NCBI GenBank assembly: GCA_035084275.1
Contig: CM068756.1
Coordinates: 6,324,001 to 6,388,000 of the forward strand
Direction of reading: 5' to 3'
Length of the DNA stretch: 64,000 bases
DNA from: Hydrolagus colliei
Taxonomy: Eukaryota
Position 1 is the stretch's first letter; every line of letters starts with the position of its first letter. The notes beneath the pieces are model-generated. The model ran no database searches. It was not told the DNA's origin and saw only the letters and a list, made by a program, of their open reading frames with translations. This document shows positions 37,823 to 64,000 of this stretch, in pieces. Both the position numbers and the translations under genes were made by a program.

Positions 37823-38017
37823 TCACATTCCCTGCTGCATCCTGGCAGCTTTAAATTTTGAAACTCTTTTTGGAGGCTCCAGTGGAGTTTCAGGTGCACT
37901 GTCTTCTTCAGACACTTTCTTCTCAGGTATTGTGGGTAGGATGGGATGAGCAATAGTAGCATGTGGAATAAATGAAGGCGAGAGCAGTTCCTTTTCCACC
38001 ACAGTGCCTGAAAATGC
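37823..38017 (-). CDS. URI1: URI1 exon 11, terminal (AFSGTVVEKE...KRVSKFKAARMQQGM*)
   Basis: atag|GCATTT; 64 codons then TGA at 37825-37823. Confidence 0.96.
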   Translation of the reverse strand, partial: AFSGTVVEKELLSPSFIPHATIAHPILPTIPEKKVSEEDSAPETPLEPPKRVSKFKAARMQQGM

Positions 38018-44000: not shown

Positions 44001-47000
44001 AGTTTCTGTAATTACTGTGAAAGAGTTACACTGAATGCCTTATACTGTCACTGTCTGCAGAAGGTAGAAAAGTGTTCATTCCCTTGGATGGACATTCCTT
44101 ACTTTCATAAGTACAAAAAGCTTTCACAACTTAAAACACTTCCACAATACCTCCTTTGTACAGGCATTTTCACCAGTGTCCCAGGAGAACATAAATATAT
44201 TCTAAAAGCCCTGGGAGATTGACCTACAATGACAAGGAATTTGAGGAGGGGAGGGAGGAGAGTAATGCTCAGAAGCTGGCATATGTAGATGTAACATTTA
44301 ATAAAATGAAAGGAACGTAATTTTTTTTAATACTGAAGTTACCTCCTCTTCATTTCAGACATTTAGTACACGAAGGTATGGGCTGACAGTGCTTGCTCAA
44401 TGAGACTAATTCAGACAGGGAAACATGCAGCAGTCATTTTCGAGACAGCCTTGAATGGTATATCTATCATTGAAGTTTAGATCAATTGTGTAAAAAAAGT
44501 TAATTAAAAGACCTTATTGTCTTTATGATAGTATGTTTCATAACCATCATTTTAAACATTGACATTTACCTGTCGATTTCATCCTGTATCTTCTCCTGTG
44601 TTTCTAGTTCATCTAACCTGGCCCACAATTCCTCTTCAGTAAGCACACTTGGTTTTGTCTTGGAATCATCTTTGCTATCTTCCAGTTCTGCTACAAAAAT
44701 ATCTTTCGGCTTAAGGTTTTCTGTTATCTTATGAGCTTTTCTGCATTTTCCTGCAAGATCAGATTTTAAAAACACAACGGGTGAATTATAATTCAATTTT
44801 TTCCAAATGTCAAATACTTAATCTTTTTCTTTTACAATTTGGAAAATAATGTTTTCTCACTGTAACAATGAACAAACAGTTCATTTTAGACATCATAAAT
44901 GCTTCAGCAATTTTCAAACCTAAAATGTTAACTCTTTGAAGTCAGTATTCAAATGAGCTTTTAAAAACTTAATTATGTGGGGGGTGGGGTGGGGAGGAAG
45001 GTGGGGGGAAATAAACACACAAAAAGAAAGAAGTAATTTTGTTTGACCAATTGTTCTAAATCGGTTACAGATTGCTGGGTTGAAGAGTTTGGCTTTGGGG
45101 AAAGTATAATTATTATTTGTAATTGCACTTATTTCTAACTGAAATAATAAAAGAATTAATAATTTTATGCAACACTGAAAGATACACATTTTGAACCGGA
45201 ACAATGCCAAATTATTCACTGAATGATCTTTATTATAAAGCCCTCCACGGCCTCACCACACCCTACTGTTGCCACCTCCTATCCCCAACCAACCTGCCTG
45301 CTCCCTCCGCTCAGTGGGCTCTAGCCTCCTCCATGTCCCCCAACCCACCCGTCCCACCCTTGGCGGACGATCCTTCAGCCACTCTGCTCCTAACCTCTGG
45401 AATTCCATCCTACACTCCCTCCAATTTCCCCCCTCCCTAGCCTCTTGTCCCGCCTCAACTCAAGACCCTCCTCTTTGACAGTCCCATCGATCACCCAAAA
45501 TCCCCTCCTTTCTCTACACCCTCCCCGATCCCGTCCGCAGCTTGGGTCTGAAACATTGACGGTACAGCGCCTTGGGACATCCTCCCGATATGAAAAGCGC
45601 TATACAAGTGTAATTTTGCTGTTGTTGTTTATTGCTTCAAAATCCAAACTCTTTTATTAGAGCATTTTTTAAAAATGTTTTCCCAAACAATTTAGGAGTC
45701 CAGTTAAAAAAAATGCTGTAATAAAAGGTCCCCAAACATTTTAATGTTAAGATGGTTATACTATTCAACAAGAAGTAATCACCAATTCCAATTCACGCAA
45801 CCACAAGATTAAGGCAATGAATAAAGAAAACACAACCTAAACACAAATATGAAACAGGATATGCATTATCTTTTGTCCCTCTCAAAGTACTTTACGCCCT
45901 AGGTGTGGTTCAGAATTCAAATTGGTAATAATTGTTTTTATTTTTAAATTAAATTTAAAAACATTTAAATGAGAGCCACACATCTCTTTCAATCTTGCTT
46001 GAGTTTATGCAGTTTAAAATAAACAGAACAGAAAACAGATTTTCAATACCTTGTGAACTGAGGTCTTCAGGTTTAAGATCTTCATTCTGAATTTCCTCAT
46101 GTATTTCTACAATTTCTTTACTTTTCTATATTTGAAAATAAATAGTATTTAATAATAGTTTTAAATAAATCATTTTCTTTGGTAGCAGCTTGATAACCAT
46201 CTACAAAATGTCACACAAAATATCCTGTCAATCCACTTTACATTATATCTTGTGAAGAGCCTTGAGATGTCTCAGCGACATGATAAGGCGTTATATCAAA
46301 TGCAGAGATTATTATTATCATCATCCTCAACCACCTCCAGAATGGTGGAGTCACCTTTACAGGGGAGCTCATGACTTATTGTCTTCAGAAATTATGAGGT
46401 AAGGTTGCAGGCTCGCTGATTAAATGGAAAAAAAACTATAAAATCTGAAGAATCGACAGAAATATATGTAGAAAACAAGCAGTTTTAAAACTTCCTAAAC
46501 ATCAGATCATGAGATGTTAATAAAGTTATGAACAAATAGTAAAACTACATAATAAAAGATGTCCCATTAGCCTTCAAATAAATTCATTTGTAGCTTTCAA
46601 TGTATACACTTGTTTTGATTAGGTATATTAACGCTTCAACATAAGATCCTTAAAAATTAAAAGGACAACAAACCATAGCATTCCTAAAAGAGCCAAATAC
46701 TAGTTTTAAATTAATCTGTTCCATTTGTGAATCTTTTCCATCACACCAAATGGAACGTAAGGGAGCAAGAATCACAAAAGGTCATTCAGCTTTAACAGTA
46801 AATCTATGTTAGCTGAGCCTAATAAAATTGTAATAACTGCACATGAAAATTACCACATACATCAGCCACATTTTGCAGATCTTCAATGAACTTGACCCTA
46901 GATTCAAAGTTCTTCACTACTTTATGCAAATCATCTAGTGCTTTTTGTACATCTGAAAGGAACAACATTGATTTAGCAATATAAAGAAATATATATATTA

Positions 47001-50000
47001 CATTAACTAAGAGAAAATGAATAGTTTAAATATATGACAAATTTAAAATAAGGTAATCCTGAAGTGACGACCAACAATGATTTATGATAAAATGCTACCC
47101 AAGCAAAACGAATGACACCTAAGTTGTAGACCCACATCGTACAAAGTCTACATTCTCAAAGGGATTTTTTATGACACACTTTATTAATCTAATATGACAT
47201 CACTGCCTTTTAAAAGGACACAACAATGCAAGCTGTAATTTCAGATGGAGGGATGGTTTGGGAAAAGAAGGGTATTATTTAATGTACAACTTTGCACCCA
47301 CACATTTTCAGATAGTTGATGCTCTTATTTAGCACAGGGTTATTTGGCAATGTTATAGGGGGTTTGAGGTAATCTGTTTCATCCATGAAAAGCAGTCAAT
47401 GCTAATCATCGTGTAGATATGATGTTCTCTGTGTTTAAACACCTTGCCAAAAGGGCCTGCCCAGGGTTACATCTGAAAAATTATCTGTGGAACTATACCC
47501 TTGCTTTTAGAAGAGGAATTTAAGACTGGAATATTTGCATCACTGCTACAAAACAGCACAATTGAAACAGAACTTACTAATTCTCCTTTAAGAAGTCAAA
47601 ATGTTCAAAATGATCCAAGATCAAATATAGGTACAGCGGAACTTGGTTTATTTATTGGAGCTATGTAAATGCAATGCATCAAAACTGTAACAAAAATAAT
47701 ACTGATAAGAAATATCTACACATTATGCAGGGAAGAAGAAGGTGGCCATATACAGTAATGAGATGAAGCAATGTGCCTTTCAAGCTTCCTTAAAACCTAG
47801 CCAGCATATTTGGATTACTACACCTAATATATGGAGAATAGAGAATGAGGGATGATTTTTGAATAGAAAATGAAGGATGATTTAGAAGTAAAAATACATT
47901 TTGGTGGATGATATTGCATTTCTTGAATTCATTCATCAAAATTATGGTCTACCTGCTATACATCATTGCTCATTGTAATATCCATAATACCCATAGTATA
48001 ATTAGCAAGAAAACCTAATATAAGAAGGGTAATCAAACCATGTAACAGGATAATAAAGGTTATGTTATTTAAACAGGGGAGAATCTAATTCCCACTTTTC
48101 AGCCTCAGAGAAGAAACTCCTAGTGCACTAAAGGAAAATAAGATTTCATTAACAAGCAGGAAATTGAAAATGCATGCATTAAAATGACTGCATAAACAAA
48201 GGGAAATGATGGTGTAAACAATTCATAAAATTATAAAGCCTTGAAGTTTGATCTAGATCAAATTTCTGCAACAATTAGGCTTTTTACACAGCAGCAAATT
48301 GGTATGGTTGCCATAGCAAGGCTAAGCCCTGAAGCCATATATCTTTGATTCTGGAAAGGTCAGACTTAGACAGCCTAATAACTCAAGAACTGTTTGACAG
48401 ATTTCAACCAAGCATGGTCAAATAATAATATAAAACCATGTCTGTGGTTGTTAAATGCTGGAGGTCGGCAAAAAGGTTAAGGTTATGGAATGTTTTTGCT
48501 TAACTCAGAAAGATAATATGAATAATTATGTCTGGATCTAAGGCACAATTTAGGTGAGAGGTTAAGATACCGCATTTTTCAATAACTTTAATAAATGTTA
48601 AGCAGCCAGCCAAATCACTGGCATAATAAACTATATTAAAGTGAATCTGAAAGTGAGCAAACATTACACAAAGACGGTGGACTAAACAAATCCCATTTCA
48701 AAGATACAAAATACGGTGTGCGCTAGTTGGGCCGATTGGCCTGTTTCTGTGCTGTAATAGTCTATGTAATTCTATGTACAGTAAACTCTTCCAATACCTC
48801 AATGAATTCATCCAGTGAGAATTTGGTTCATACAGACCATTAATGTTGGTCTGATCAGAATGTTACAATTCTGATCTGCAATGAATTAGTTGATTTTAGT
48901 CAAGTAGTCAGGATACTTCAAGTGCCCTATGCTAGTGTAGTGACTGCTTTTGCAAGCAAACTCATCAACAATTTACGCAAGCAAGTTCCTAACCAACCAT
49001 GAGGCAAATGATCAATTTAGTACAGGCGTTTGTGTCAGAATTAAATAATGTCAATACAAATATTAAGCTTTCACTAAGTTGCATTGTTTACCTATAAAGC
49101 AGCTCAATGTGGATTTATTCCCTGTGTACAGATTACTCACAGTTGCCTTGAAAAACAGTTTTTTTTAAATGTGCTCAGCTCCGTTTTCCATGAGTGAAAC
49201 ATGTCTCAAGCATTGTTCCAAAATAACTCATCAATGAAATCAATTATTTGTCAACAGAATGAACAAAGCCACTCTCTGTGCAAAGTGTGAAACTACAAGC
49301 ACTTTGCTTCACCAGATAGTGAATGTGAAAGTTATACTTGATCAAAACCATTGCTATTATTGCGACATTTTACAATACAAACACTGGTCAAAACATTTAA
49401 GCAATCATTGTCTACAAACTGAGGTTCAGCAAGTTTTTGCCCAAAATGATTCAATCAATTCATTGAGGTAATTAAGTAACTGATTTTATACCACGTACTG
49501 TAACAATAGATAGCATAGAAAATTTAATTGGTGAATGTCAGATGATAAATGGAAAGAATCCCTTGAAGTGAAGCCTGAAATCACACGATTTCACCATTGG
49601 TTTCCCCATCATTCAGAGGATTCAAGACGTCGTCACCTTTAAAATCCTCCATGGCCTTGCCCAACCCTACCTCTGTGACCTCTTAACCCCCTATCAACCT
49701 GTCCCAGTCCCTCCGCTCAGCGGGCTCCGGCCTGCTCCATGTCTCCCAACCCACCATCAGCGGGCGAGCATTCAACCACTCTGTCCCCAACCTTCGGAAT
49801 TCTCTCCCGCAGTTCTCCGCCTGCCCCCTCCCTAAACTTCTTCAAGTCCCACCTGAAGACCCTCCTCTTCGACCAAGCCATCAGTCAGCCCCATTCCCCT
49901 CGCATTCCTCCACGCTCACTGATCCCGACCCAGCTCGGGTCTAAAACATTGACTGCCCAATGCCTTGGGACATCCTACCGACATGAAAGGCGCTACACAA

Positions 50001-53000
50001 TGTAATTTTGTTGTTGAAACAGAGATCACACTCATAATTTTTTTTGCTGCAGTTTTTGATCTCCAGTAATGTGCGGACAATGTGAAATAAGGTAAACTAG
50101 CAGAGCTTATTTAAAAAAGACAATTTGAAAACACATTTAGAAAAATAATTATTTTTAATACACATTAAATTCAAGCTGAAAAGGAATGCAGGTATAGAGG
50201 AATAACTTACGCTTTTTCCTGTGCTCTACCAAGTCTGCAGCTTGCTTTGCAGAACACTTTGCAAACCAGTTGTCACCCAGTAACACAGTGACTTCATTTG
50301 TATGCACTAGCTGTCCAGGCATAAATGCAAGTGGGCCAAATGGCACCTATCATAAAAACAAATTAAAACATTTACATCAGGAATTCTATGAGCTCTGCAT
50401 AGATTTAATTACATTTTGAAAATGTGCACATTGTTTTTTTAACTAGGCTTCAATATGAATACTTAATTACAGTAATAATCTGATAAAAGGGTCTCGTTTC
50501 AGTTAATACATCTACCCCACTCCCATATCTGGCTAGGTAGAAAAAGCAAACAAACTTTGATGTTGAATGCCTCAAAATGCTTCACCGGCATTTACTGTAG
50601 TGACCGTCTTTGTGGGCAAACACAACAACTGGTGAGGTGAATAACTAATTTATCCAGATGATTGTTGGCCATGGGAAAACCTCCCATCTTTTCAAACATG
50701 CCCTGGAATATTTAATGTCCATTTGGAAACATGAATGGAACCTCAGTTTAATAACTCCAAAGCAATATACGGTTATAGAGTACCTTTCACATCAGGAGGA
50801 GATCTCATAGAGGAAGGGCTTAAACTCACTACCTTCCAACTCAGAAGCCAAAGTACAACCAACTGAACTAGCCACTTTCATCCTCATATTCTGAACGCAA
50901 GAAATGCCCATTATCTTATGGGTGATTCTTCCCTCAAGTCTGGCCTCCATCCACACTGAAACAACCATTCCTGTTTTTCTCCACATTATAAAGGTCATTG
51001 TTGCTTTGAACTTTCCCCTTCTCATCCATTCCAGATTCCATTTGTGGGGTACCAATGTTTTTTGATCAAAGGATGAACAGATCATATAAATAAACAATGT
51101 TGCTGTACATTTTCAGTCCTGATAGTTTTTCTACAGATGGTGGTTGACTTGTGATCCAGCTAAAATTAATTTAAACCTCAACGGTTCCATTGAGGTTCCT
51201 CATACCTTATATCCAGGTTAAGTTACCATTGAGGTAAAAAAAACCTCTGAACATCCGAAAGCAACCACAGTTAATCTAATGACATCAAAATACCATAAAG
51301 TGTTTTAGTTTAATATCCAGAAGTGTTACATCAATAAAAATGGAAAACAAAAATTGGCAGTTGGAATGAGATATTATAGTTTAAATTGTTAATAACTACT
51401 GTAAATACCCGCGTATAGGGCGCACTCGCGTATAAGGCGCACCCCCCACTTTTGACCTTTTCTTGGTGAAAAAAAACGGAAGCATTTTCGATGATATTGC
51501 CGGCAGAAGGGAGGGAGGCANNNNNNNNNNNNNNNNNNNNNNNNNNNNNNNNNNNNNNNNNNNNNNNNNNNNNNNNNNNNNNNNNNNNNNNNNNNNNNNN
51601 NNNNNNNNNNNNNNNNNNNNNNNNNNNNNNNNNNNNNNNNNNNNNNNNNNNNNNNNNNNNNNNNNNNNNNNNNNNNNNNNNNNNNNNNNNNNNNNNNNNN
51701 NNNNNNNNNNNNNNNNNNNNNNNNNNNNNNNNNNNNNNNNNNNNNNNNNNNNNNNNNNNNNNNNNNNNNNNNNNNNNNNNNNNNNNNNNNNNNNNNNNNN
51801 NNNNNNNNNNNNNNNNNNNNNNNNNNNNNNNNNNNNNNNNNNNNNNNNNNNNNNNNNNNNNNNNNNNNNNNNNNNNNNNNNNNNNNNNNNNNNNNNNNNN
51901 NNNNNNNNGGCAGCAAGCACAGCACTGAAGTCCTCTGCTGCTGCCGCTGCCCGGGCGGCCGAGGCCAAAGCCGCATCACCTGCTCCCCCCAACCGCCGCC
52001 GGACAGTGACCAAAGCCCGGCTGACAGCGCACGGGCCGCCCCTCCTGTTTACTGTATTTCCTAGGCTAAAAATTTATTGTACCTGCGTATAGGGCGCACC
52101 CACAACTTTCGAGATCTTCCGACGTGAAAAAAAGTGCGCCTTATACGCGGGTATTTACGGTAAACAAATACAATTAAAAACACTTGCATAGACATCCACA
52201 TTTTGTGAAACAGTTCGAAATCAAATGCTTTAAAATAACTAATAAAAAATGACAGTCACTTGAAAGGATGAATGGACACTAATGCTTTCCTGATCCTGCA
52301 AGAGAAATCTGCTGTTATTGGAAATATTAAAGCCAGCTAGAATATACTCAACAATGTCAATCATTAAAATGAATAAGCCACTTGTCTGTATTTTTACTTT
52401 GTAATATTACAGTAAAAGCCTGTTTATCCGTGACCTGATCAACCGCAACTTCCGTATAACCAGCACCTCAAAAAAAGGTCCTCATTCGATTAACCGTAAT
52501 TTATCCGGCACAATGCATTTTTTTAAAAAAACTTTTGTGTGTGTGTTTTCGGCCAAATATCCGGCATGCGCTTTAACCGGCATTGGCCAGGTCCTGAGGG
52601 TGCCAGATAAACGGGCTTTTACTGTACTATCAATATGTTCCCAAAAGTCATGAAATAGACTCGCCTCCAAGAGAAAATTTATGGTGAGTTTGCAAGCAAG
52701 ACGCTGTGTAATCTATATTCTCAGTTCCTATAAACATAAAAGGTGTTAAAAGAAAGTCTGACTATATCCTTCAAACTAAAAGGGTACACACTCACAGAGA
52801 ATCAACCTCAAGACAAGCAATCTAGTCAGAAAACAGGCAATTCTTTTTTATCTAAAATATGAAGCCATTATTGTTACAGAACAAAACATTTTTTATATCA
52901 GTAACCAATGAGGCATGAGTCAAATGAATTACTGCTTCAATTGGTGATAAAAGTATTGCTGATTTCACCTTTAATTTGGAATTTCATATAGACTATTCTA

Positions 53001-56000
53001 AGCTTTTCAGATTGCTTGTGAGCAACTTTGATGAGGGAGATATGAGGTAATTCTGCAATATTATGCATCTACACCTATTATGCATGCAATTACAAGGGCA
53101 CGTAATTGGATAATTCCCTAGGGTGTAACTTAAACACATAAAGAAAGGCCATTTAGGCAAAGTACCAGTGGGGACCTGTGGAACCAAGCTGCCAGCATGT
53201 CACCACATTTGCACATAGAAACACTCAAGCGATAAGATGCAGGAAACTCATGCTACATCATTTCCCAATCCAACATGGGAGGAGGGGAAGAGGTTAAAAC
53301 AAAAATGACAAAATTTGCACCTACCATAACATCATAGGACAGTTTGTCAGGCAAAGTCTTTAGTCTTTCTTGAAGTGCTTCATAGTCACTTTGCACCTTA
53401 TTCCTAAGCAAAGAATAGTTTGTTAAATGTTTGGGATTTCATTTTTAATTGTTTAAACATTTCACAAAATGCACACAAATAAATTAACTGTGCAATTTTT
53501 CTATTATTTGTTTTCAAGGAACACTCAACACTTACCAATCATAAATAAGACCAGCTAACTAATGTGCTGGTTCATCTGCTTTACAGAATGTAACTGTAAT
53601 TGAAGAAATACTCATACTACTTTAATCGAGCCTCAAGAGCCTAGGCAACTAATATACCTTAGTCAACACTGTTATGTTTGGACAAATGTCCATTGAATGA
53701 TCTACCTCTCAGAAAAGCAAAAAACAATAAAATTCCATTAAAAAATTTACACGAACACTCTAGCAATCAAACAGATTGCATTTTAGAAATTAATCAAATT
53801 AGAATTTCAACTTACTATCACTGTCAAAATTAATTCATAAAAATTTGTTTTAAAATTTATGGTTGACAGTGATGATGCCAACCTGACACAACTGAATGCA
53901 ATCTGGGAACAAAGGAAGATTTTTATTGCTTAATTCCTTAATTGCATAAAGGAAGCTATTCCCAAGAAAATCATAGGTTGTATGCAGGTAGTTATCTGTT
54001 AAATAGAAGAGATGATGCTTTTCCTGCCACATTTTAAATGATGGATATATATGGGGAAATAAACAATGATTATGGATTTTCAGTAGAACAAAAAACGTAT
54101 AACAGAAGGGAAAGTTTGGTTATAACCCAGGCTCATGTATTTGCTTTGCAGCAATAAGGGCCTACAATGTAAGTATGATTTGAACAATATTTTAAATTAA
54201 GGAGGAGATATTCCACAAATTATGCTTTCAATTCAATTCACCCAAAAAGATGCTTTTGGGATGATGTTTGCAATTCGGCCATTCTTTATTTGTGAAATAT
54301 GTAGCATGAAGCAGGCTAGATTATTCAGGAAGGGCAGATGTGAACTATATAAATGAGACTTATTTATCCTTATCAGATAACCATCCATGACTTGGAACTG
54401 GGACATGGACACAGGCTGATTTTCCCCTTTACCCACACTAAAATGCTGTCCATAATCAAGTTTGAAACTGTGACTTCCCTGTAGGATGTGAATAATTGAT
54501 ACTAATACTTATATTAATTTTTCTGTGATTTTTTTTAAAAAGTAGCAAAAATATTAAAGAACTTTTGTTTAATCTACTGTAAACAAGATTAAACTACTTT
54601 TTTTCTGAACACAAATGTTTTTATTGGCTTCACTATTCCCAAAACAAGAAAACAGTGATCAGCAATTACTCACTCAGCCCCACTTATTTCAAGTCCTCAG
54701 TAAAATTAGTTTAGACTCTGCTATTTTGTGATATTTCATAGCTAGTTCAAAAGATGGTTACTGCACGAAATGAGGTACAGACAACTAATGGAACTGTGCT
54801 TCTTATTTCAGCCTGTCGCTAGAATACATGGCTAAGATGGAAAATAAATGTACTCTATATCTAGCTTGACAATTATTTTTCAGTTGAAGGCAAATCATTT
54901 ATTTACCATAAAGCCTGCATTACCAATTGTCAAATAGAACTAATCATATTTCTTCAATAAACCAATAGGAAATAGAATTCGGTAGAGTGAGTGAGCAATT
55001 TACGCAAGATTTGTTTTTCAAAAATCACTGTTGACTTAGGTTAGTTATTCATTTTGTTTATTGGATAAGTGATATCACACAATTTACACAAAAGATAAAT
55101 GTTACCAAATTGTTGCTGCTGAACTTTAAAAACATTATTAATTCCAATATTTATAGTTGGAAGATTTATTGGAACATTTGGACTTACCAATGCTGAATTT
55201 TTTCCGTGCAGCTTGAAACTACCTGTTATTAAAATAGACAACTGCTCATAAAAAGCAATGTCGAGAATTCCAAGTACTGTAAACATGAGTGCAACATACA
55301 ACAATAGTAAAATAAATTTATCAGAATAACAAAGGCATTTGGAAACAAAAGTTACTGTTATATGGAACATATTTTGCTTGGTGATATAAAACACTACACC
55401 ATACGTGAAGGCAAGGTAAAAGTACACAACAAAATTCCCCTTTAACATCAGTTTACATCCTTCACTCGGCTTATAAAAAGGGGAGAATGGGAACTACGAA
55501 ATACTCGTTCAATCTATAGAAACATCTCTATTCACAGAATCTATAATCTGCTTTGCCAAAATAACCTGTTTTTCATAAGAATACAGAGTAGGAGCAGGCC
55601 ATTCAGCCCCTCGAGCCTGCCCCTTTATATTGCATTTTATAAATAGGTCATGGAAAATACTAAAATACAAACATTTATTAATCTAAAATATAATCTGAAA
55701 TCTTCAAATGTTTGGGGTCAACCAAGTGTCTGACTGATGCATGCAGATACCAATTACCATACTTCAAAAAATATATAAACCAGAGTTTTACGTGTGCATC
55801 CCATCTATGTATGGAAATTGCTATACAGTGCACTATTGTTGTAAATCTTTGTTGAGGAAATCAAAGATATACACTTGCAATATGGTAGGATAAGTACACA
55901 ATATTCCTGATGAGTCATTTGACTTATCAAAATAATACAATGCCTTGGGACGTCTTCCCGACGTGAAAGGCACACTATAAATGTAATTTTGTTGTTTTGT

Positions 56001-57974
56001 TGTTATTGTATCAATAGATTTTTTTAAACTAGATTGTCATTGATTGATACAATATCTCGTATGTGTAAAGGCCTAAAGTACAATATGCACATTTGCAAAT
56101 GTTCCATAAATATCCAGCCAGAGGGGCCACAATGATCTTTTCTGGTGTTGTCCATCCCCTTCAATCATACAAATTTGGAAATTATTAAACTTTGTTCATA
56201 AACAAAAGCTTTTTTGAAACTGAATAATCTTTTCATTTTCAAATTACTGTACTATACTGCTTGCACATGTGATTTAAATTGATTTCTCATTGTTCTGAAA
56301 CAGTTACATGAAAGGAAACCTTTTATCACACCTAAAGTTTTTTTCCTGAATGGATTTTATTATTTCCTCCAGTCCCAGTGACATGTCTGTCTCATATTTC
56401 TGCCAATACCTCCAGGAGCACTGGAAGAACCACCAGAAACAGTTCATCTGTTCTCCCTACCTTGCTATGATGAAGTGGCTATCCAAATACCTTCAGGTTA
56501 GTCCAATAGTATAATAGGCTCAGTCTGATATCATATTGACATTCAATCTGAATAGGACTACTGCAATTTCTCAGATTATTTCGGGGGAAAGGGGAAGAGC
56601 TCTATGACATTAAAAGTATGGTAACACATATGGTAAATCGGAACATTAGACTGAAAACAAAATGTTGTTGAGCTTTTATCTTCAGAATTAAATGCAATTT
56701 TAATCTGAAGATTTCAATTTTGTATTTCTATTAAAGTCCCACCATCAGCCTCTAGGGAGCGCCAATGCACAGTGTTGAACCATCGTGGTATTCTTAACAA
56801 TGTCCTGATGGTTACTGTAAACCCCATTGATAAGAAAACCGACAATAGTATGAAGGTAGAGTTCATAATCTCCCAATGCCTTGGTTTAATGCTGTTTTCC
56901 TTTCATAGCAACTCTTTAAGTACAAGAAACACGATGGTCAGCTAAAACCAGTTTTATCTAGGCAACATTTAAAGTTTGCACGATTTTGGATCTCATGAAA
57001 AATGTTCTCCTTGCTGTGCAAATATGATAACGCACAATCTGCTCTACTAGTTGGGCATTCACTAGTTAAATTGAAGAAGAAATGCAATGTTAATAACAGA
57101 TAACACAGAGGAATTTAACTCAGGTTTTAAATTGCAATACTAACACGCTTCATAGACTCCTAGCCAAAGATAACTGAAAAAAAGTCAAAAATGTATTTTT
57201 TATTTTTAAGTTTACGTGATTCTTCACAATTTCCCTTGCAAGTTTAAGTGTTTTAATCCGCGTTTACGATATTGAACAAAAAAGGTCTCTGTTGAATTAT
57301 TGTTAAAACTCATTAACTTTGAACTATTAATGCGGATTTTTAACACTAGTAATTGTTTAGATGTTCTGATTTGTTTGGGGGTAAAACATTGTTGTGTTAC
57401 TCGCTGGGTGGGTGGGGGGGGGTCTATCCAATGACTGAAGGGAAGTACTAAAACCATTTTAAACAGAACGGCCCCGCGGTGTGGGAAGTTTACTGTTTCA
57501 CCTACAATTCGGAACCTCGCAAAACGTTTAACGTCAGACTCTCCACTCTTTGTACATTTGTTTGTGTGTGTGTGTGTGGGGGGGGGTGGGGGGGGGGGGA
57601 CTGACGACGATGGAAAGTTTAAAGAATTTAAGGATTGGACAAGTCCTTGAGTACAAGGAAGGAGCATATACTCGACTGTGTTTGGTGGGGGGGGGGATAA
57701 TTCCAGACAGTAAAGAGACATTAATTAGAACTGGTTCACGGCGTCGCGTTTCCGTTTAAAGCGCCACTGCTCCAACTCCAGGCGTTTGCTTTGAACTCAG
57801 GGTCCCCCGGGTGCAACGGCTCCATTCGTTCCTTCTTCCAACCCTCGGCCTGCCAGACCAGACCGCCTGTTAACTGACTCGCTTTACCTTGCCGTGCTCT
57901 TCCCCGAGTCGGGCCACTTGATGCGAGCGAAGCGCGTTGCCGGCGAGGGGCTGCTGCTTCTGCGAGTCCGCCAT
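37823..57974 (-). CDS. URI1: URI1, unconventional prefoldin RPB5 interactor 1 (11 coding exons, 521 aa; whole-gene span)
   Basis: Manual splice reconstruction: exon lengths 87+35+79+136+92+76+181+292+149+244+195 = 1566 nt, all GT-AG, open frame. Recognisable alpha-prefoldin domain (MVPFGPLAFMPGQLVHTNEVTVLLGDNWF), EELWARLDELE segment, acidic tract, RKSILKSRSRENSVCSDTSES and C-terminal KRVSKFKAAR (URI box). Confidence 0.97.
38172..38246. repeat. Short imperfect tandem repeat (gctaaacagctagtactaaaRgta, ~3 copies) in URI1 intron 10
   Basis: Directly visible repeated ~23-24 bp unit. Confidence 0.75.
38632..38875 (-). CDS. URI1: URI1 exon 10 (MFVDVVNGEYIPRKSILKSRSRENSVCSDTSESS...PGLFE)
   Basis: 244 nt, gtag|AATGTT...TTGAG|gtgaga; follows a 118 nt intron. 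Confidence 0.96.
38994..39142 (-). CDS. URI1: URI1 exon 9 (VRINTGRNTTLKFSEKKEVAKRKRRNS...LPNIKSPTDIYR)
   Basis: 149 nt, tcag|GTAAGA...TATCG|gtattt; basic NLS-like KRKRR. Confidence 0.95.
40107..40398 (-). CDS. URI1: URI1 exon 8 (TSDTVDGNSGENSSSEDEQ...DDNDDDDVPTILFTHTMEPKR)
   Basis: 292 nt, tcag|AACGTC...AAAAGG|gtaagt; acidic tract followed by PTILFTHTMEPKR. Confidence 0.92.
40655..41061. mobile_element. Tc1/mariner (pogo/Tigger-like) MITE
   Basis: TA-flanked; ends CAGTAAAAGTCAGTATATCCG ... CGGATAAACGGTTTTTACTG. Confidence 0.85.
43119..43831. mobile_element. Tc1/mariner (pogo/Tigger-like) MITE with long internal inverted repeat
   Basis: TA-flanked; ends CAGTAAAAGCCCGTTTAT ... ATAAACAGGCTTCTACTG. 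Confidence 0.9.
44570..44750 (-). CDS. URI1: URI1 exon 7 (GKCRKAHK...EEELWARLDELETQEKIQDEIDR)
   Basis: 181 nt, gcag|GAAAAT...GACAG|gtaaat; matches ORF-track 44566..44796. Confidence 0.94.
45233..45630 (+). mobile_element. L2-clade LINE 3' fragment in URI1 intron 6
   Basis: KALHGL motif, then cagcgccttgggacatcctcccgatatgaaaagcgctatacaagtgtaattttgctgttgtt tail. Confidence 0.88.
46050..46125 (-). CDS. URI1: URI1 exon 6 (KSKEIVEIHEEIQNEDLKPEDLSSQ)
   Basis: 76 nt, atag|AAAAGT...ACAAG|gtattg; IVEIHEEI resembles IVDIREEI; phases fit both neighbours. Confidence 0.88.
46225..46322 (+). mobile_element. SINE 3' part in URI1 intron 5
   Basis: tgtgaagagccttgagatgtctcagcgacatgataaggcgttatatcaaatgcagagattattatt. 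Confidence 0.75.
46861..46952 (-). CDS. URI1: URI1 exon 5 (HVQKALDDLHKVVKNFESRVKFIEDLQNVAD)
   Basis: 92 nt, tcag|ATGTAC...GCTGAT|gtatgt. Confidence 0.95.
49595..50016 (+). mobile_element. L2-clade LINE 3' fragment in URI1 intron 4
   Basis: cattggtttccccatcattcagaggattcaa...ctccatggccttgcccaaccctacctctgtgacctc is near-identical to 25214-25310; same tail. Confidence 0.88.
50211..50346 (-). CDS. URI1: URI1 exon 4 (VPFGPLAFMPGQLVHTNEVTVLLGDNWFAKCSAKQAADLVEHRKK)
   Basis: 136 nt, atag|GTGCCA...AAGC|gtaagt; alpha-prefoldin beta-hairpin signature. Confidence 0.97.
51399..52160. mobile_element. Tc1/mariner (Tc2-like) non-autonomous element spanning an assembly gap
   Basis: TA-flanked; TIR CYGTAAATACCCGCGTATARGGCGCAC at both ends; subterminal repeat of GCGTATARGGCGCAC; GC-rich interior partly N. 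Confidence 0.88.
51521..51908. other. Assembly gap
   Basis: Run of N. Confidence 1.
52410..52624. mobile_element. Short copy of the same MITE family (opposite orientation to 43119-43831)
   Basis: TA-flanked; CAGTAAAAGCCTGTTTATC ... GATAAACGGGCTTTTACTG; shares acctggccaatgccggttaaagcgc (reverse complement) with the 43119 copy. Confidence 0.9.
53325..53403 (-). CDS. URI1: URI1 exon 3 (NKVQSDYEALQERLKTLPDKLSYDVM)
   Basis: 79 nt, ttag|GAAT...TTATG|gtaggt; prefoldin helix. Confidence 0.95.
55188..55222 (-). CDS. URI1: URI1 exon 2 (VVSSCTEKIQHW)
   Basis: 35 nt, acag|GTAGTT...CATTG|gtaagt. Confidence 0.93.
55940..56005 (+). mobile_element. L2 3' tail fragment
   Basis: tgccttgggacgtcttcccgacgtgaaaggcacactataaatgtaattttgttgtt. 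Confidence 0.78.
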
Positions 57975-58400
57975 CTCCTCGCAAGCGGCGTGTGTCTGTC
58001 TGTGACTGACTGACTGTGTCTCCCTCTCTCTCTCTCTCTCTCCCCGCGAGGGGCGGAGGGGGGGAGACACACACCAAAGAAAAAATCACCTCAACAACTG
58101 CGAGTCCTAAAGAAATGTTTATGGAGGTGATCACTGCAGCCCCGGAGCTCCTGACTCCTCGTACACATAGAGGGAGCAATTGACGTTGTCATCCAGGCGG
58201 TCGGGGCGGAACACATTTCACACTCGCATTATTCCCGCTTCAGCCCCAACGGTTCGAACCAAAGCTCCGCTCGCTCTCAGCACCGCCAGCAGCTCGGCGC
58301 CATCTTGCTCTCTCTCGCTGAGCATTCTGGGAGGGCAACACAAGGCACCACAACAAGCGGCCAGACAGACAGCAGCAGCTCCAGCCTCACTCAGCCACAG
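57450..58400 (-). promoter_or_regulatory. CpG-rich promoter/first-exon region of URI1
   Basis: CpG-dense against an AT-rich background; GC box GGGGCGG (~58203), TGACGT (~58181), YY1-like AAGATGGCG (~58298-58306, minus), (GA)n tract upstream of the ATG. Confidence 0.7.
57888..57974 (-). CDS. URI1: URI1 coding exon 1 (MADSQKQQPLAGNALRSHQVARLGEEHGK)
   Basis: ATG in gagATGG context; ends AAG|gtaaag, phase 0; VARLGEEHGK resembles the VARLREEQEK end of mammalian URI1 exon 1; CpG-rich setting. Confidence 0.9.
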
Positions 58401-58537
58401 CACAGGCAACCAACACACTAGCCACAGGCAACCAGCACACTAGCCACAGGCAAACAACACACTAGCCACAGGCAACCAACACACTAGCCACAGGCAACCA
58501 ACACACTAGCCACAGGCAACCAACACAGTAGTCACAG
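58401..58537. repeat. 22 bp minisatellite, ~6 units (left arm)
   Basis: Unit gcaaccaRcacactagccacag; ctag at 58418, 58440, 58462, 58484, 58506, then a degenerate sixth unit. Confidence 0.95.
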
Positions 58538-58630
58538 TGTATTTCCCCCCTATTACAATGAGCAACAATTGGCAAGCTAAGGATCTTCAGTATTTAGAGA
58601 AGCACAACTCAGATGTAACCTTATAGATGT

Positions 58631-58750
58631 ACAACAACAACAAAATTACATTTATAGAGCGCCATGTCGGGAGGATGTCCCAAGGCGCTGAACAGCTAGG
58701 TCGGGGCCGAGCAGGGACGGATGGGTTGGGGTAGCAGCAGGGGGAAGGAG
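58631..58750 (-). mobile_element. L2 3' tail fragment in the inverted-repeat spacer
   Basis: acaacaacaacaaaattacatttatagagcgccatgtcgggaggatgtcccaaggcgctg. Confidence 0.78.
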
Positions 58751-58866
58751 AGTAGGAAACATTTTGAATGGAGCTGAAAAGCCAAATTCAGAACAATGCT
58801 TTAGAAGCGTTTCTCAAACAAGTGATAAGGCGCAAAGGATGCAAAGGATTCATATTATGTATCACT

Positions 58867-58950
58867 AAATAATAATAATCCTTGCATTTGATATAGCGCT
58901 TTTCACATCTTCTAGACGTCTCAAAGGATTTAGGATTCACAACTGTAAAA
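58867..58950 (-). mobile_element. SINE 3' tail in the inverted-repeat spacer
   Basis: aataataataatccttgcatttgatatagcgcttttcacatcttctagacgtctcaaag. Confidence 0.75.
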
Positions 58951-59254
58951 CAAGAGGCAATAATTGGTTTAAAGTGGCAAAGGACAGACACCACAAATCA
59001 CAGAATGATACAGCACTGAAGGAGGCCATTCGGCACATCATGTCTGTGCCAGCTCTTTGAAAAGAGCTATTGAAAGTCAATGAAGTTTTTCTTTAGCAGA
59101 AGAGCAAATAATTAATGACTCGGGTGGGGCGAAGGGGGGGGACAGACAGATTCCTAGGAAGAGTGCCAGAGGCAAGGACAACTGGACACTTAGTTTTAAA
59201 AATATATATATACCAGTATTTAAAAAGTTTGAGTGACAAGAGGCTGGTGTTGTG

Positions 59255-59457
59255 CTGTGGCTAGTGTGCTGGTTGCCTGTGGCTAGTGTGCTGGTTGCCT
59301 GTGGCTAGTGTGCTGGTTGCCTGTGGCTAGTGTGTTGGTTGCCTGTGGCTAGTGTGCTGGTTGCCTGTGGCTAGTGTGTTGGTTGCCTGTGGCTAGTGTG
59401 TTGGTTGCCTGTGGCTAGTGTGCTGGTTGCCTGTGGCTAGTGTGTTGGTTGCCTGTG
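59255..59457. repeat. 22 bp minisatellite, 9 units (right arm, reverse complement of the left array)
   Basis: Unit ctgtggctagtgtgYtggttgc; ctag every 22 nt from 59261 to 59437. Confidence 0.96.
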
Positions 59458-60260
59458 CTGTGGCTGAGTGAGGCTGGAGCTGCTGCTGTCTGTCTGGCCG
59501 CTTGTTGTGGTGCCTTGTGTTGCCCTCCCAGAATGCTCAGCGAGAGAGAGCAAGATGGCGCCGAGCTGCTGGCGGTGCTGAGAGCGAGCGGAGCTTTGGT
59601 TCGAACCGTTGGGGCTGAAGCGGGAATAATGCGAGTGTGAAATGTGTTCCGCCCCGACCGCCTGGATGACAACGTCAATTGCTCCCTCTATGTGTACGAG
59701 GAGTCAGGAGCTCCGGGGCTGCAGTGATCACCTCCATAAACATTTCTTTAGGACTCGCAGTTGTTGAGGTGATTTTTTCTTTGGTGTGTGTCTCCCCCCC
59801 TCCGCCCCTCGCGGGGAGAGAGAGAGAGAGAGAGGGAGACACAGTCAGTGAGTCACAGACAGACACACGCCGCTTGCGAGGAGATGGCGGACTCGCAGAA
59901 GCAGCAGCCCCTCGCCGGCAACGCGCTTCGCTCGCATCAAGTGGCCCGACTCGGGGAAGAGCACGGCAAGGTAAAAGTGGTCCCTCGCTCGAGTCCGAAT
60001 TGGTACTCGTTGCCTTCCAACATTTTGGCCTTGTGCAAACAAAACCCGTGTAAAGAGTGAGACGGTCGCCCGACATTTGAAAGTTTTGCATCGAGTTTTA
60101 CGAGGTTCCGATTTGCAGATCCTATCAAAATATCGTAGCCGCGAATTAATTCCCCAGTCCCTTTAAAGCGTTGACGTGAAATCTATTGGTTGAGCGGCTT
60201 CTAGCCATTGAGCAGTGGCGTTTGGGTGTGTCCAGAGTTCAGAGAAAGTACGAGAAGGCG
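59458..60260 (+). promoter_or_regulatory. Mirror-image CpG-rich promoter region of the duplicated exon 1
   Basis: Same motifs in the opposite orientation; CpGs continue past the donor to ~60260. Confidence 0.6.
59884..59970 (+). other. Second, inverted copy of URI1 coding exon 1 (identical 29 codons, intact AAG|gtaaaa donor); function unknown
   Basis: Same translation as 57974-57888; no URI1 exon-2-like sequence found on + up to 64000. Confidence 0.85.
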
Positions 60261-61924
60261 GTTCGTTATCCAGGCAACTCCCAGACATTTTCACAAACCT
60301 TCCCCTTGTATAGAGAGGGAAGGGAAAATAAATTAAAACAGAGGGGTTACATGTCAGAATTTGATCATCTTTCTCCTCCCATCCCCTAGGCTACCACCCC
60401 CAACTCGGTTCTCCTAGTTGAAAAGTGTAAATGTAAATTTGTATTCAACTTTTCGTAATTACAGCTTTGTAATTTTTTCTAAAGTGAAATCTGAACCTAA
60501 TCCATTCACTAATTACTTGCCAAGTCTTTTTAGATTGGCACTGGATTTAATCAGACAGATATACATATGTGTCTGATACGTGTAAATTGGAGCTATGTTT
60601 GTGCTTTCAAATACAAAGCAACAAGCAACATAAATCTGATTTAAACCAGATTCAAATGGCTTCTGCTTGTTAAACAGTTTCGTGTTTTCACAAATGTGGT
60701 GGGCATTTTCTGAATACTCATACTAACTCCCAAAACAAATTGGTGAGATGGGTGGGGTGGGGGGTTGTTTGACATTTCCAGTTATGAACAAGACAAATTA
60801 ATCATTGCATATAGTTCTTCAGCCATACATTGGCCCTGCATGAGTGTGCGTGTGTGTATGTATATATATATATATATATATATCCACACACATACACTGT
60901 CTATCAATTGGAATTATGATGCCATATGGAGTGTAGAATTTTTACCAGGAATAGAATCTGCTGTTGGAACAGGTGTTCATTGTGAATGAGTGGATGGTCA
61001 ATGGTGATCATTAGGATTTATGCTTGTACATAAATCAGTTATGTTGCCAAGTGCCACATTAAATTTTGTGTTGCTGCCACTAAGTTTCTGTGCTCTATCA
61101 TCTGACATGAGGCTTTAAAACCAGATCAAAAGTGGCTCTTTGTATGACACCCCATTTAATCAAGGCTTCTAGCATCTGCTTAAAACTATCGTGTAATCCC
61201 AAATTTGTCCCGACTTTAGATTCTGCATAGTGTGCATTCTACAATGATCTTCACCAACTTTGGGTGCCATATTTTAATTTAAGAATCAAAGAGCTGGCCC
61301 TTTCCCTGAATTCCCAACTTGTATATTTTACCAGTGACTTGTACTTTACTGTACTCTATCCCTTACCAATAATTCAGTTCCACAATGCATGTCAAAAAAG
61401 CTGTAAAATATACTTAAATTCCATACAATTTCCAATGTTTAATTTGAATGATTCTTTCACCATGTGTTGGAAATTGTTGTTTCTGATGCATATTGAATCA
61501 AACATAATCTCAATACTTGTTCACAAAAAATATTCAAGCTTACCAAAATGTTCAGGCTTCAAATCTCAGTTTGTAATAAAAAATATACATTTCTTCATGA
61601 AGTAAATAGAATGGCCATTTGATCTTAAAGATTCCAACACTAGTTGTTCAGTATCAATTTACTGTACTGAGCATAAATTATTACTTGCGAGGGTTTTTAA
61701 AAAATGCATTTACTTCTCTATTTTGACTATTTTCATGCATGTTTGCCAGGTAAACTTAAGTTGTGGTGGCCAAGTTATGCCTAAATAGCGCCTGCTGCTG
61801 TCAACAGAAGTATTTAACATAACAAAAGCCTTATTGAAAGAACAGCTGCTGGTGCAGTTTAAGTTGGAAGCCTACATCAGTGTGCCTATGGGGAGGAGCT
61901 TTCTCCAAAACTGATGATTTGATG

Positions 61925-62227
61925 ATAATAATAATCTTACATTTGATAAGTGTTTTTCATGTCTTTTAGATGTCTCAAAGCGCTTCACAGAATATACTGT
62001 AAAGTTAATTGACTGTATGTGGGCGAAACGCGGAAACCAATTGTGCACAGCAGTGTCCTGCAAAATCATGGATTGAAATGACCAATTTATTATTGTGGGT
62101 TTTTTTTGGAAGTTTATTAGGTGTGTGGAGTAAGGAAACTTGCCCCAAGTTTCGCCCTGACCTGCTTAGATTCGAACACAGGTCTAACACTTGCAAGGCA
62201 ACTGCTCTAACCACTGAGCTATAGGCC
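61925..62227 (-). mobile_element. Near full-length tRNA-derived SINE with L2-like 3' tail (DeuSINE-like)
   Basis: Minus strand begins ggcctaTAGCTCAGTGGttagagca (A box) ... GTTCGAATC (B box); body ctgtgcacaattggtttccgcgtttcgccc; tail tgtgaagcgctttgagacatct...(att)n. Confidence 0.85.
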
Positions 62228-64000
62228 TCCATAAACATTAGTACTGTACTATTAAAGTACTGTTTAGAAGCTGAGATGTGGTCATCACATTTACCTAACA
62301 AGCAGAAATGAGCAAATATGGTGAATTACAAACCATATCAATTTGGATTCCCTTCTCTTACCCCTATATTGTGATATTTTAATGCCAACCTGGATCAGTT
62401 GGCAGTACTCTCACCTGAGTTAGCTTATGCACCATGTCAGGACTTTGAACTCAGTCTAGGCTTATAATACAGTGCTGGGAAGCACTTCTCTTCCCTCCTC
62501 GCACTTGGTAGACTTCCCAATTTACTTCTGAGCCCAATTGGCTGCCATGTTTTGCACACATATTAGTGAATTTACTTCTCAGTATATTCTGTGAAGCATT
62601 TTGAGACCCCTCGAAGATGTGATACAAATGCAAGCATTATTCATGGAATGAATTCCTGAAGTAGGCCAAGCATCTTCAAACTGGGACAAAATCCTGCTGA
62701 ACCTTCATGTGGCCCATTTATCTCCTCTTTCTCACATACACACACATATATATATAATATGTAAAATCTAAAAAGCACGATTCAAAGTAATCAAGACTAA
62801 CATCCAACATGTTGGTTAAATCTAATAGAAATATTGCACTTATATTGACATCATATTGACTTGATCAACTGTCCATCTTATTTTTTCAAAAATCCAATTC
62901 AAAGCTGTCCTTCCTTTTATTGTTCCTCCTCAAAACAATTCATAATATAATTGAAGTTACAAAAATCTTTATTTCCTACTTCCATATTCTGAAGTAGTCA
63001 AAAAGACATCTATTAACTAGGAAAGAAAGTTCACAACACTCAAATCCTATGGGGAAAAATGCCTAATTATATCACATGTTCCAGCTTAGCAACTGCACAA
63101 ATCCAGTTACTTGATCTCTTCTACACAGATGGAGTCCAAGAGGCATGCATAAATTGAGTAAGAATTAAATTTTAACAGCTGCTATAGTGCAATCTGTTTT
63201 CAGTACAAGGTTGAATGGAATGTTCGCAAGATGCAAGTATTTATTGCAAGGAGTGAATGTGAAAGACTTCATATATTGAGCAACAAGATGCTTCATTTAC
63301 AGTAGTTTGAAACTTGTCAGAAAGACTTGTTTAGAATTAAAGGCAAGGGCAAATGTTATAATTCCAACTATATAAATAAGAGCACTGGAAGTACAGGAAT
63401 CATAAATTCAGGTATATGAAATTGAAATCAGATGTTTTATCACAAATGAAAGTAAAGCTCGGTTTCACTTTCTGAGAGACAATCTTGACTTGAATATGCT
63501 TAAAGCAGAGCAATTTAAGATAACCCAATCAAAGATTAACCAGGTCAGCATTTCCTCAAAAACAAGTATAAAGCTACTTGTGTGAAAATTGATTGAACAG
63601 TTGGTAAGAGTATTATCTTCATTTATAGTTTGTCAGTTTTTAAATGAGAAACAAGCTTCAAATAGTGATTTCATATCACTGAACCATCAAGGTGAGGTTT
63701 TACTGTACTTTCAGGCAACATCCAGTGCACAGGAGCATCACTCATGATTGCTCACTGTGGTATATATGCCTGCTGATATCAAATCTTTAAAAAAAATGCT
63801 GAGGTGATAGATGATTGTACCTCAAATAGAACTTCGAATTGTCCTTCAGAACATATTATGGTCACTCCATTTTCTATGAGAGAACCAGTTATAGCCATTA
63901 ATTTATGATAACAGTATGTAGAATTTCCAATTTAGCACTCTGAACCATCTTCAAAGATGTGTGGCATCAAGTAATTGCTCAATTGAAACTTTATCTACAA

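What the first reader, a model, noticed from the sequence alone, without database searches (positions are those of the whole stretch)
57883..59975. URI1 promoter and first coding exon duplicated head-to-head as a near-perfect palindrome
Seen: 518 bp of unique sequence (promoter motifs, 5' UTR, ATG, all 29 codons of exon 1, donor) occurs twice in inverted orientation with no indel, even across a (GA)n tract. I found one substitution (gtcagtCagtcac vs gtcagtGagtcac). The arms flank two VNTR arrays and a ~720 bp non-palindromic spacer. Identity ends 5 nt into the intron (AAG|gtaaa). Inference: this is a mirror-image twin promoter, one arm driving URI1 leftward and the other driving a transcript rightward with an identical first exon. 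I know of no such arrangement described for URI1.
Basis: partly seen in the sequence, partly recalled or inferred. Interest (0 to 1): 0.9.

Follow-up and report, generated by a model that had tools for sequence, protein, structure and literature searches.

The report
Mirror-duplicated start of URI1 gene
In a chimaera-type fish the promoter and first coding exon of the housekeeping gene URI1 really exist twice, back to back as mirror images, and are probably kept identical by copying between the copies; whether the spare copy is transcribed is not known.

Summary
Arms 57883-58400 and 59458-59975 are 518 nt of mirror-image sequence with one mismatch and no indel. They continue inward into 22-bp tandem arrays of unequal length around a 707-bp unique spacer.

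In contigs from two independent samples of the same organism, both outer junctions are present at equal depth. The arm sequence has twice the depth of the flanks and spacer.

The left arm is the true 5' end of a complete 11-exon URI1 gene on the minus strand. Its exon 1 matches 24 of 29 residues of the Callorhinchus milii URI1 N-terminus.

The right arm is an orphan copy. No exon 2, Pfam domain or curated RNA was found in the 4 kb to its right.

A related organism also carries the right junction, about 2% diverged and with a frameshift in its exon-1 copy. The duplication is therefore probably old, and the arms in this genome were probably homogenised by gene conversion.

Rightward transcription could not be tested, because no RNA run was listed. 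This is a new member of a known kind, small palindromes or partial gene duplicates. The scan had already noted this same stretch (s1-903741, s1-903790).

The parts
57883..58400 (-). Left arm, unique part: URI1 promoter region, 5' UTR, exon 1 and the first 5 nt of intron 1
   Evidence: One mismatch and no indel against 59458-59975. Contigs of X1 and X4 cross the outer junction at 57607-57912.
57888..57974 (-). URI1 exon 1 coding part (29 codons, ATG at 57974-57972); the donor GT follows at 57887-57886
   Evidence: Translation MADSQKQQPLAGNALRSHQVARLGEEHGK has 24 of 29 residues identical to the N-terminus of Callorhinchus milii URI1, P0156.
55188..55222 (-). URI1 exon 2 (VVSSCTEKIQHW), with an acceptor AG before it and a GTAAGT donor after it
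   Evidence: tblastn hit with P0027, sequence context, location. C. milii has VVSSCNEKIQHW at the same place.
37826..53402 (-). URI1 exons 3 to 11, at about 53322-53402, 50212-50346, 46861-46950, 46063-46119, 44569-44769, 40100-40400, 38990-39142, 38632-38874 and 37826-38017. These are context showing that the gene body lies to the left.
   Evidence: Exon-by-exon tblastn with P0001, P0023 and P0027; ORF listing. Exon ends are approximate and the exons were not joined.
58401..58537 (.). Left 22-bp tandem array, 6.2 copies; inner part of the left arm
   Evidence: Tandem Repeats Finder; family D2.
58538..59244 (.). Non-palindromic spacer of 707 nt, holding two interspersed-repeat fragments (about 58631-58716 and 58860-58950)
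   Evidence: No mirror matching. blastn finds other copies of both fragments in the window. Contig depth in the millions at these places; the unique part 58899-59047 is at single-copy depth 38.3 in X4.
59255..59457 (.). Right 22-bp tandem array, 9.2 copies (partial units start at about 59245); inner part of the right arm
   Evidence: Tandem Repeats Finder; family D1.
59458..59975 (+). Right arm, unique part: second copy of the promoter region, 5' UTR, exon 1 and the first 5 nt of the intron
   Evidence: Contigs of X1 and X4 cross the outer junction at 59946-60836; the arm-end contig 59869-59975 has twice the flank depth.
59884..59970 (+). Orphan copy of URI1 exon 1 coding part; donor GT at 59971-59972. 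If unspliced, the frame runs on for 29 more codons to a stop at 60058-60060.
59850..59850 (.). The only difference between the unique arms (pairs with 58008)
   Evidence: The reads tool skipped this place as a repeat, so whether the difference is fixed or allelic is unknown.
59976..60400 (+). CpG-rich unique sequence beyond the right arm (CpG observed/expected 0.89, GC 0.47)
   Evidence: It is unique in the window apart from one 24-nt match.

Best explanation
This is a real, fixed, small genomic palindrome. A segment holding the URI1 CpG-island promoter, the 5' UTR, the whole first coding exon and its splice donor was duplicated in inverted orientation next to itself. The two copies are separated by 22-bp tandem arrays and a 707-bp unique spacer.

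Shown: both copies and both outer junctions exist in the DNA of two independent samples, with two arm copies for each copy of flank. The left copy is the working start of a complete URI1 gene. The right copy has no URI1 exon 2 behind it.

Inferred: the duplication is older than the split from a related organism, which also has the right junction. The arms in this genome have been made identical again by gene conversion between the inverted copies, as in the larger sex-chromosome palindromes.

Inferred and untested: the right copy keeps every promoter and donor signal of URI1 and lies in CpG-rich, probably unmethylated DNA, so it most likely fires rightward. The product would be a short or non-coding transcript that begins with the URI1 first exon, not a second URI1 protein.
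For: - Structure.
- Reads, sample X1: the left-junction contig 57607-57912 has depth 25.6 and the right-junction contig 59946-60836 has depth 27.2. The arm-end contig 59869-59975 has depth 49.7 and the arm interior 51.9.
- Reads, sample X4 (another sample and study): the same contigs have depths 34.7, 34.2 and 63.7. The arm interior bin is 72.5 and the unique spacer piece is 38.3.
- Gene model.
- Orphan status of the right copy: no exon-2-like sequence with up to 8 mismatches and no tblastn hit to the right. 0 of 5 ORFs have a Pfam match.
- Age: in organism B (X6) a contig of depth 122.1 runs from inside the arm (differences at 59900, 59937 and 59959) across 59975 to beyond 60312.
- Divergence between A and B in six unique flank pieces is 32 substitutions in 1630 nt. 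That predicts about 10 differences between arms that evolved independently, against 1 seen; Poisson P = 4e-4.
- CpG observed/expected is 0.75 in the left flank, 0.78 in the arms and 0.89 in the right flank, against 0.33-0.44 in the spacer and further out.
Against: - No RNA data were available, so activity of the right arm is pure inference.
- The left junction was not seen in X6; the 57701-57900 bin has depth 0. The tool warns that a hole proves nothing. It was seen in X7, a low-coverage run that shares about half of B's differences. Coexistence of both junctions outside organism A is therefore not shown in a single run.
- If the slower A-B rate of the arm itself is used (4 substitutions in 450 nt), the Poisson test is only P = 0.056. 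With indel events added it is P = 0.001.
- The X6 arm-interior contig has depth 92.2, not twice the depth of its neighbours, so homogenisation is not seen in B.
- No clear homology remains beyond the arms. The best mirror match is 24 nt at 21/24, and the control orientation scores about as well. This fits a young duplication as well as an old one with a fixed boundary.
Confidence: 0.65

Rival explanations
1. The duplication is young and specific to this lineage. The arms are nearly identical simply because there has been no time to diverge, and no gene conversion is involved.
For: One difference in 518 nt with no indel. Sharp outer boundary and no convincing flank homology. Both junctions were not seen together in one run of another organism.
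Against: Organism B (X6) has a contig crossing the right junction, with about 2% divergence in the flank and three differences inside the exon-1 copy. The junction therefore seems to predate the A-B split. The arrays differ by three units (6.2 against 9.2 copies).
Confidence: 0.17
2. It is an assembly artefact: a fold-back chimera, or a second haplotype joined in the wrong orientation, with only one exon 1 in the real genome.
For: Near-perfect palindromes are a known kind of long-read assembly error (recalled, not from a call). X1 may be the sample the window was assembled from.
Against: X4 is another sample and another study of the same organism. It has both junction contigs at equal depth (34.7 and 34.2), the arm at 63.7-72.5 and the spacer at 38.3. 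X1 shows the same pattern. The unique 707-nt spacer, the unequal arrays and one substitution do not fit a fold-back.
Confidence: 0.03
3. The right arm is the first exon of a separate protein-coding gene. That gene would reuse the first 29 URI1 codons and splice to exons beyond the window.
For: An intact ATG, an open 29-codon exon and a GT donor are identical to the working copy. The right flank is CpG-rich. Only 4 kb to the right can be seen.
Against: In organism B the copy joined to this flank has a 1-nt insertion behind 59959, which shifts the frame 12 nt before the donor. There is no Pfam match in 5 ORFs and no exon-like hit to the right. In organism A the open frame can be explained by conversion from the working copy.
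Confidence: 0.08
4. It is a fold-back or long-terminal-inverted-repeat transposon that happens to sit at URI1.
For: The overall shape: 0.65-kb inverted ends around a 0.7-kb middle.
Against: The arm occurs only twice in the window and has a depth of two copies in reads. It encodes the conserved URI1 N-terminus. I saw no direct repeat of the flanking bases at the two ends when reading.
Confidence: 0.01

Closest known systems
Sex-chromosome palindromes with arm-to-arm gene conversion (human and ape X and Y). I saw only the start of the abstracts of PMC6790999 and PMC10705393 in search listings; the rest is recalled.
   Same: Two inverted arms of more than 99% identity around a unique spacer. The arms carry gene sequence. 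Identity is explained by conversion between the arms, and the structure appears older than the arm divergence suggests.
   Different: Those arms are about 10 kb to Mb long and hold whole, mostly testis-expressed gene families. Here each arm is 0.5-0.7 kb and holds only the promoter and first exon of a single-copy housekeeping gene. Whether this locus is sex-linked is unknown.
Partial (5'-end) gene duplicates that carry a promoter and first exon and seed new or chimeric transcripts, for example HYDIN2 (PMC5345166) and NPEPPS/TBC1D3 (PMC12871316). I saw the listing and the start of the abstract only.
   Same: A promoter plus first exon is copied without the rest of the gene, giving a possible new transcription start.
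   Different: Those copies are large, usually dispersed segmental duplications with documented transcripts. Here the copy is tiny, adjacent and inverted, and no transcript is documented.
Bidirectional (head-to-head) promoters and promoter directionality set by splice donors and poly(A) signals. I saw the starts of the abstracts of PMC11230626, PMC4859611 and PMC3583895; the U1-PAS axis is recalled.
   Same: Two divergent transcription units come from one CpG-rich region. The right side has a donor site close to the presumed start, the feature said to favour productive elongation.
   Different: A classical bidirectional promoter is one shared region with starts less than 1 kb apart and two different first exons. 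Here there are two full promoter copies, with ATGs 1910 nt apart and identical first exons.
Inverted duplications made by fold-back priming or template switching. I saw the starts of the abstracts of PMC10622511 and 10.1101/2023.09.19.558550.
   Same: An inverted copy lies next to the original with a short unique spacer. This is a plausible way the structure arose.
   Different: Those are described mostly in cancer, yeast and human copy-number variants. Here it is a fixed germline structure. No microhomology or other mechanistic mark was identified.

Membership tests
Genomic palindrome maintained by gene conversion | Two inverted arms of near-identical sequence around a non-repeated spacer | tested here: met
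   518 nt with 1 mismatch, continuing into the arrays; 707-nt spacer.
Genomic palindrome maintained by gene conversion | The structure is real in DNA, with two arm copies per flank copy | tested here: met
   Arm depth is 49.7-51.9 against flanks of 25.6/27.2 in X1, and 63.7-72.5 against 34.7/34.2 in X4. Both junction contigs are present.
Genomic palindrome maintained by gene conversion | The arms are more alike within a species than expected from the age of the duplication (concerted evolution) | tested here: inconclusive
   The right junction is present in organism B. Poisson P is 4e-4 at the flank rate and 0.056 at the arm substitution rate. Both arms of B were not recovered.
Partial 5' gene duplicate (orphan promoter plus first exon) | The copy holds the promoter and exon 1 but lacks the downstream exons | tested here: met
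   Identity ends 5 nt into the intron. There is no exon-2-like sequence or URI1 tblastn hit in 59976-64000. Sequence beyond 64000 was not seen.
Partial 5' gene duplicate (orphan promoter plus first exon) | The copy is transcribed | not testable with these tools
Classical bidirectional promoter | Two divergent transcription starts less than 1 kb apart in one shared region | tested here: not met
   The two ATGs are 1910 nt apart (57974 and 59884). Upstream ATGs at 59533-59690 suggest starts within about 190 nt of each ATG, so the starts would be about 1.5-1.9 kb apart. The starts themselves were not mapped.
URI1 (unconventional prefoldin RPB5 interactor 1) gene | Exons encoding the prefoldin-like region and the C-terminal URI box, in order on one strand | tested here: met
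   tblastn with C. milii P0001 covers residues 1-457 in 9 collinear minus-strand blocks at 76-100% identity. The hits are named URI1 and carry PF02996. Exon 1 matches 24 of 29 residues of P0156.
Assembly fold-back artefact | One junction is missing from independent reads, or arm depth equals or is below flank depth | tested here: not met
   Both junctions and a two-fold arm depth are seen in X4, an independent sample and study.
Fold-back or TIR transposon | Many copies in the genome and a target-site duplication | tested here: not met
   The arm occurs twice in the window and has two-copy depth. I saw no direct repeat at the ends when reading.

The most novel reading that the evidence does not exclude
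The right arm is not a passive by-product but a selected second promoter-exon module. In this reading the palindrome has been kept through speciation by gene conversion because the rightward transcript matters. That transcript would be made stable by the copied splice donor. It might be a lineage-specific RNA or short peptide, or a mirror start site that balances or insulates URI1 expression. The locus would then be a natural experiment on what makes a promoter directional.
Probability: 0.18. Interest if true: 0.65.

Novelty: new member of a known kind. Interest (0 to 1): 0.42.

Why it matters
It shows, with read support, that a very small palindrome can hold exactly the promoter, first exon and splice donor of an essential single-copy gene and persist, apparently through a speciation event. 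If the spare copy is transcribed, the locus offers a natural test of how a splice donor near the start site turns upstream antisense transcription into a stable RNA. It would also show how partial duplicates seed new transcripts. For annotation, gene finders and read mappers will find URI1 exon 1 ambiguous here, and expression or variant calls over it need care. If the spare copy is silent, this is an ordinary though neat structural curiosity.

Tried and rejected
- **Diverged homology beyond the arms** (the idea of note s1-903741). Local alignment of the two flanks gives only a 24-nt 21/24 match, score 33 against shuffles with mean 20-23 and maximum 27-34. There are two short, non-collinear k-mer clusters. 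A relaxed blastn of the whole 2.66-kb intron 1 against the right flank scores no better than the control orientation, apart from an interspersed repeat. I rejected this as evidence. I reached the 'old duplication' conclusion from reads instead.
- **PAS and donor counts.** Counts in the right flank and in the true intron 1 are alike: 5 and 6 hexamers in 2665 nt. This is not informative.
- **Rfam.** There are only sub-threshold miRNA-like hits on a microsatellite at 60829-60906, and a tRNA-like SINE head at 62157-62228.
- **Pfam.** 0 of 5 right-side ORFs have a match.
- **Protein search across the left junction.** A search with the 147-aa mechanical ORF, meant to fish out relatives' contigs, gave 330 candidates and none at E <= 0.001.
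- **Earlier-findings look-up** for a cyclin E neighbour gave nothing relevant.
- **Papers.** None of the 10 and 12 papers listed holds URI1 together with the palindrome or duplication terms. This covers the held library only. Supplementary files were not consulted.
- Searches used exon-1 coordinates shifted by one base, so the frame was wrong and one search found no alignment. One search corrected this.
- **Limits of the gene model.** The spliced URI1 model was searched exon by exon.
- **Limits on masked and human-like sequence.** The N runs 2085-2240 and 51521-51908 were left alone.


Full report
**1.
- The repeat finder reports one long inverted pair, 57883-58537 against 59321-59975: 655 nt, 99% complementary.
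- Pairing each base i with base 117858-i shows a single mismatch in 57883-58400 (58008 against 59850) and no indel. This holds even across the (GA)n tract. Matching is random outside 57883 and inside about 58538.
- blastn finds the 518-nt arm exactly twice in the 64-kb window.
- The inner ends of the arms are 22-bp tandem arrays of unequal length: 58401-58537 with 6.2 copies and 59255-59457 with 9.2 copies.
- Between the arrays lies a 707-nt non-palindromic spacer, 58538-59244. It holds two fragments of interspersed repeats that also occur elsewhere in the window.
- A match of this length cannot arise by chance.

**2. It is not an assembly artefact.**
- The look-up of sequencing runs listed 15 runs, none recorded as RNA.
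- I laid contigs of four runs on 56701-62700: X1 and X4 (the same organism A, but different samples and studies), X6 (organism B) and X7 (unnamed, low coverage).
- In X1 and X4 the contigs break exactly as a k-mer graph must break at a two-copy inverted repeat.
  - One contig runs from the left intron 30 nt into the arm (57607-57912), at depth 25.6 in X1 and 34.7 in X4.
  - One contig runs from 30 nt inside the right arm out to 60836 (59946-60836), at depth 27.2 and 34.2.
  - The arm-end contig 59869-59975 has depth 49.7 and 63.7.
- The arm interior is also at double depth: 51.9 in X1, and a 72.5 bin in X4. A unique spacer piece, 58899-59047, has single-copy depth 38.3 in X4.
- Both junctions therefore exist at equal dosage in two independent individuals, and each arm is present once per flank copy.
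- X1 may be the sample the assembly came from, so X4 is the independent support.

**3. What the arms are.**
- A URI-box exon of the window (38632-38874, minus strand) found URI1 proteins. The best hit was P0001 at 96% identity over 81 residues. P0001 is named URI1 of Callorhinchus milii, and its cluster mate P0156 is the full-length XP_042196422.1.
- Exon-by-exon tblastn places URI1 on the minus strand from 57974 down to 37826.
- Both arms translate to the same 29 residues, MADSQKQQPLAGNALRSHQVARLGEEHGK. 24 of the 29 are identical to the N-terminus of P0156.
- Exon 2 (55188-55222, VVSSCTEKIQHW) follows in phase 0, with AG and GTAAGT splice sites.
- The left arm is therefore the real 5' end of a complete URI1 gene in a holocephalan (chimaera-type) fish. 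Earlier notes of the scan use the same label.
- To the right of the right arm I found nothing gene-like:
  - no URI1-like tblastn hit and no exon-2-like stretch with up to 8 mismatches;
  - no Pfam match in 5 ORFs;
  - no curated RNA except a tRNA-like SINE head.
- Only 4 kb to the right is visible.

**4. Age and homogenisation.**
- In organism B (X6) a contig of depth 122.1 carries differences both inside the exon-1 copy and beyond the arm.
  - Inside the copy: 3 nt missing at 59900, T>C at 59937, and an extra A behind 59959.
  - Beyond the arm: 60049, 60086, 60151 and further sites up to 60312.
- That contig therefore crosses the right junction without a break.
- Six unique flank pieces of X6 differ from the window by 32 substitutions in 1630 nt (sum).
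- If the two arms had evolved independently since before the A-B split, about 10 differences would be expected in 518 nt. One is seen, giving Poisson P = 4e-4.
- Using the slower A-B rate of the arm itself gives P = 0.056 for substitutions alone, or 0.001 with indel events.
- The extra A shifts the reading frame 12 nt before the donor, so this copy cannot be B's working URI1 exon 1. I infer that B has another, intact copy.
- My reading is an old inverted duplication whose arms were recently made identical in organism A by gene conversion.
- Several observations count against this reading or leave it open:
  - No contig of X6 lay on 57701-57900. The tool warns that a hole proves nothing.
  - The left junction outside A was seen only in X7, in a 753-nt contig covering 57786-57986 and 58080-58422. 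X7 is low coverage and shares about half of B's differences.
  - The X6 arm-interior contig (depth 92.2) is not at double depth.
  - No convincing homology survives beyond the arms.
- For these reasons a young duplication keeps about 0.17.

**5. How it probably works.**
- Shown: the left arm supplies the URI1 promoter, the ATG and the donor.
- Inferred: the right arm has the identical signals. No upstream ATG lies in the last 190 nt before its ATG, while six lie further up. This suggests starts close to the ATG.
- CpG observed/expected stays high for about 400-480 nt beyond both arms: 0.75 on the left and 0.89 on the right. It is 0.33-0.44 in the spacer and further out.
- That pattern is expected if both ends lie in germline-unmethylated, promoter-like DNA.
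- A rightward transcript would carry the URI1 first exon and a donor near its start. If unspliced, it would read 29 further codons to a stop at 60058-60060 and meet its first AATAAA at 60327.
- From what I recall of the U1-PAS model, and from the abstract starts listed, a donor near the start should favour elongation over early termination.
- None of this was tested, because no RNA run was listed.
- The frameshift in B argues against a conserved protein that reuses the 29 codons.

**6. Comparison and novelty.**
- The structure works like the sex-chromosome palindromes kept by arm-to-arm conversion, but it is a hundred to a thousand times smaller and holds only a gene's start.
- It is also a partial 5' duplicate of the kind that seeds new transcripts. 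It does not meet the usual definition of a bidirectional promoter, because the ATGs are 1910 nt apart.
- How it arose was not determined. Fold-back priming or template switching is plausible.
- The outer breakpoint lies 5 nt past the donor. I have no explanation for that beyond coincidence or later selection.
- None of the listed papers in two searches linked URI1 with such an arrangement. Those searches cover only the held library.
- I file this as a new member of a known kind. The same stretch was already noted by the scan (s1-903741, s1-903790).

**7. Limits.**
- Read laying skipped 57987-58074 and 59784-59868 as repeats. The single arm difference at 58008/59850 therefore could not be classed as fixed or allelic.
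- Only contigs, not raw reads, were available, so no single molecule spanning both arms was seen.
- The N runs were not touched. Paper supplements were not consulted.

Noticed in passing
window 58401-58537 and 59255-59457: The 22-bp unit (CACAGGCAACCAACACACTAGC on the plus strand of the left array) forms arrays of 6.2 and 9.2 copies on the two sides. The arrays have changed length independently although the unique arms are identical. Whether the unit binds a factor was not examined.
   Followed up: partly
window 58631-58716, 58860-58950, 61920-62230: Fragments of two very high-copy interspersed repeats; contig depth in all four runs is in the millions. One has a tRNA-like head at 62157-62228 (minus strand, Rfam tRNA 32.8 bits). 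They sit in the spacer and in the right flank.
   Followed up: partly
window 57502-57525 and 60095-60118: A 24-nt mirror match (21 of 24) between URI1 intron 1 and the right flank, at different distances from the arms (357 and 119 nt). Its significance is borderline (E about 0.02-0.03) and it is not collinear with the second short match at 57770/60212.
   Followed up: yes
window 51521-51908 and 2085-2240: Two runs of N (388 and 156 letters). The first lies inside a URI1 intron between exons 3 and 4.
   Followed up: no
window 40074-40400: The large acidic URI1 exon is the least conserved against Callorhinchus milii (76% over 112 aligned positions, with a 3-residue insertion in the D-rich run). 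The other exons are 89-100% identical, except 44569-44769 at 78%.
   Followed up: no
window 59900, in run X6: Organism B lacks one CAG in the short CAG run of exon 1, as does the C. milii protein at the same place (MADSQK-RP). Organism A may therefore have gained a glutamine codon by slippage.
   Followed up: no
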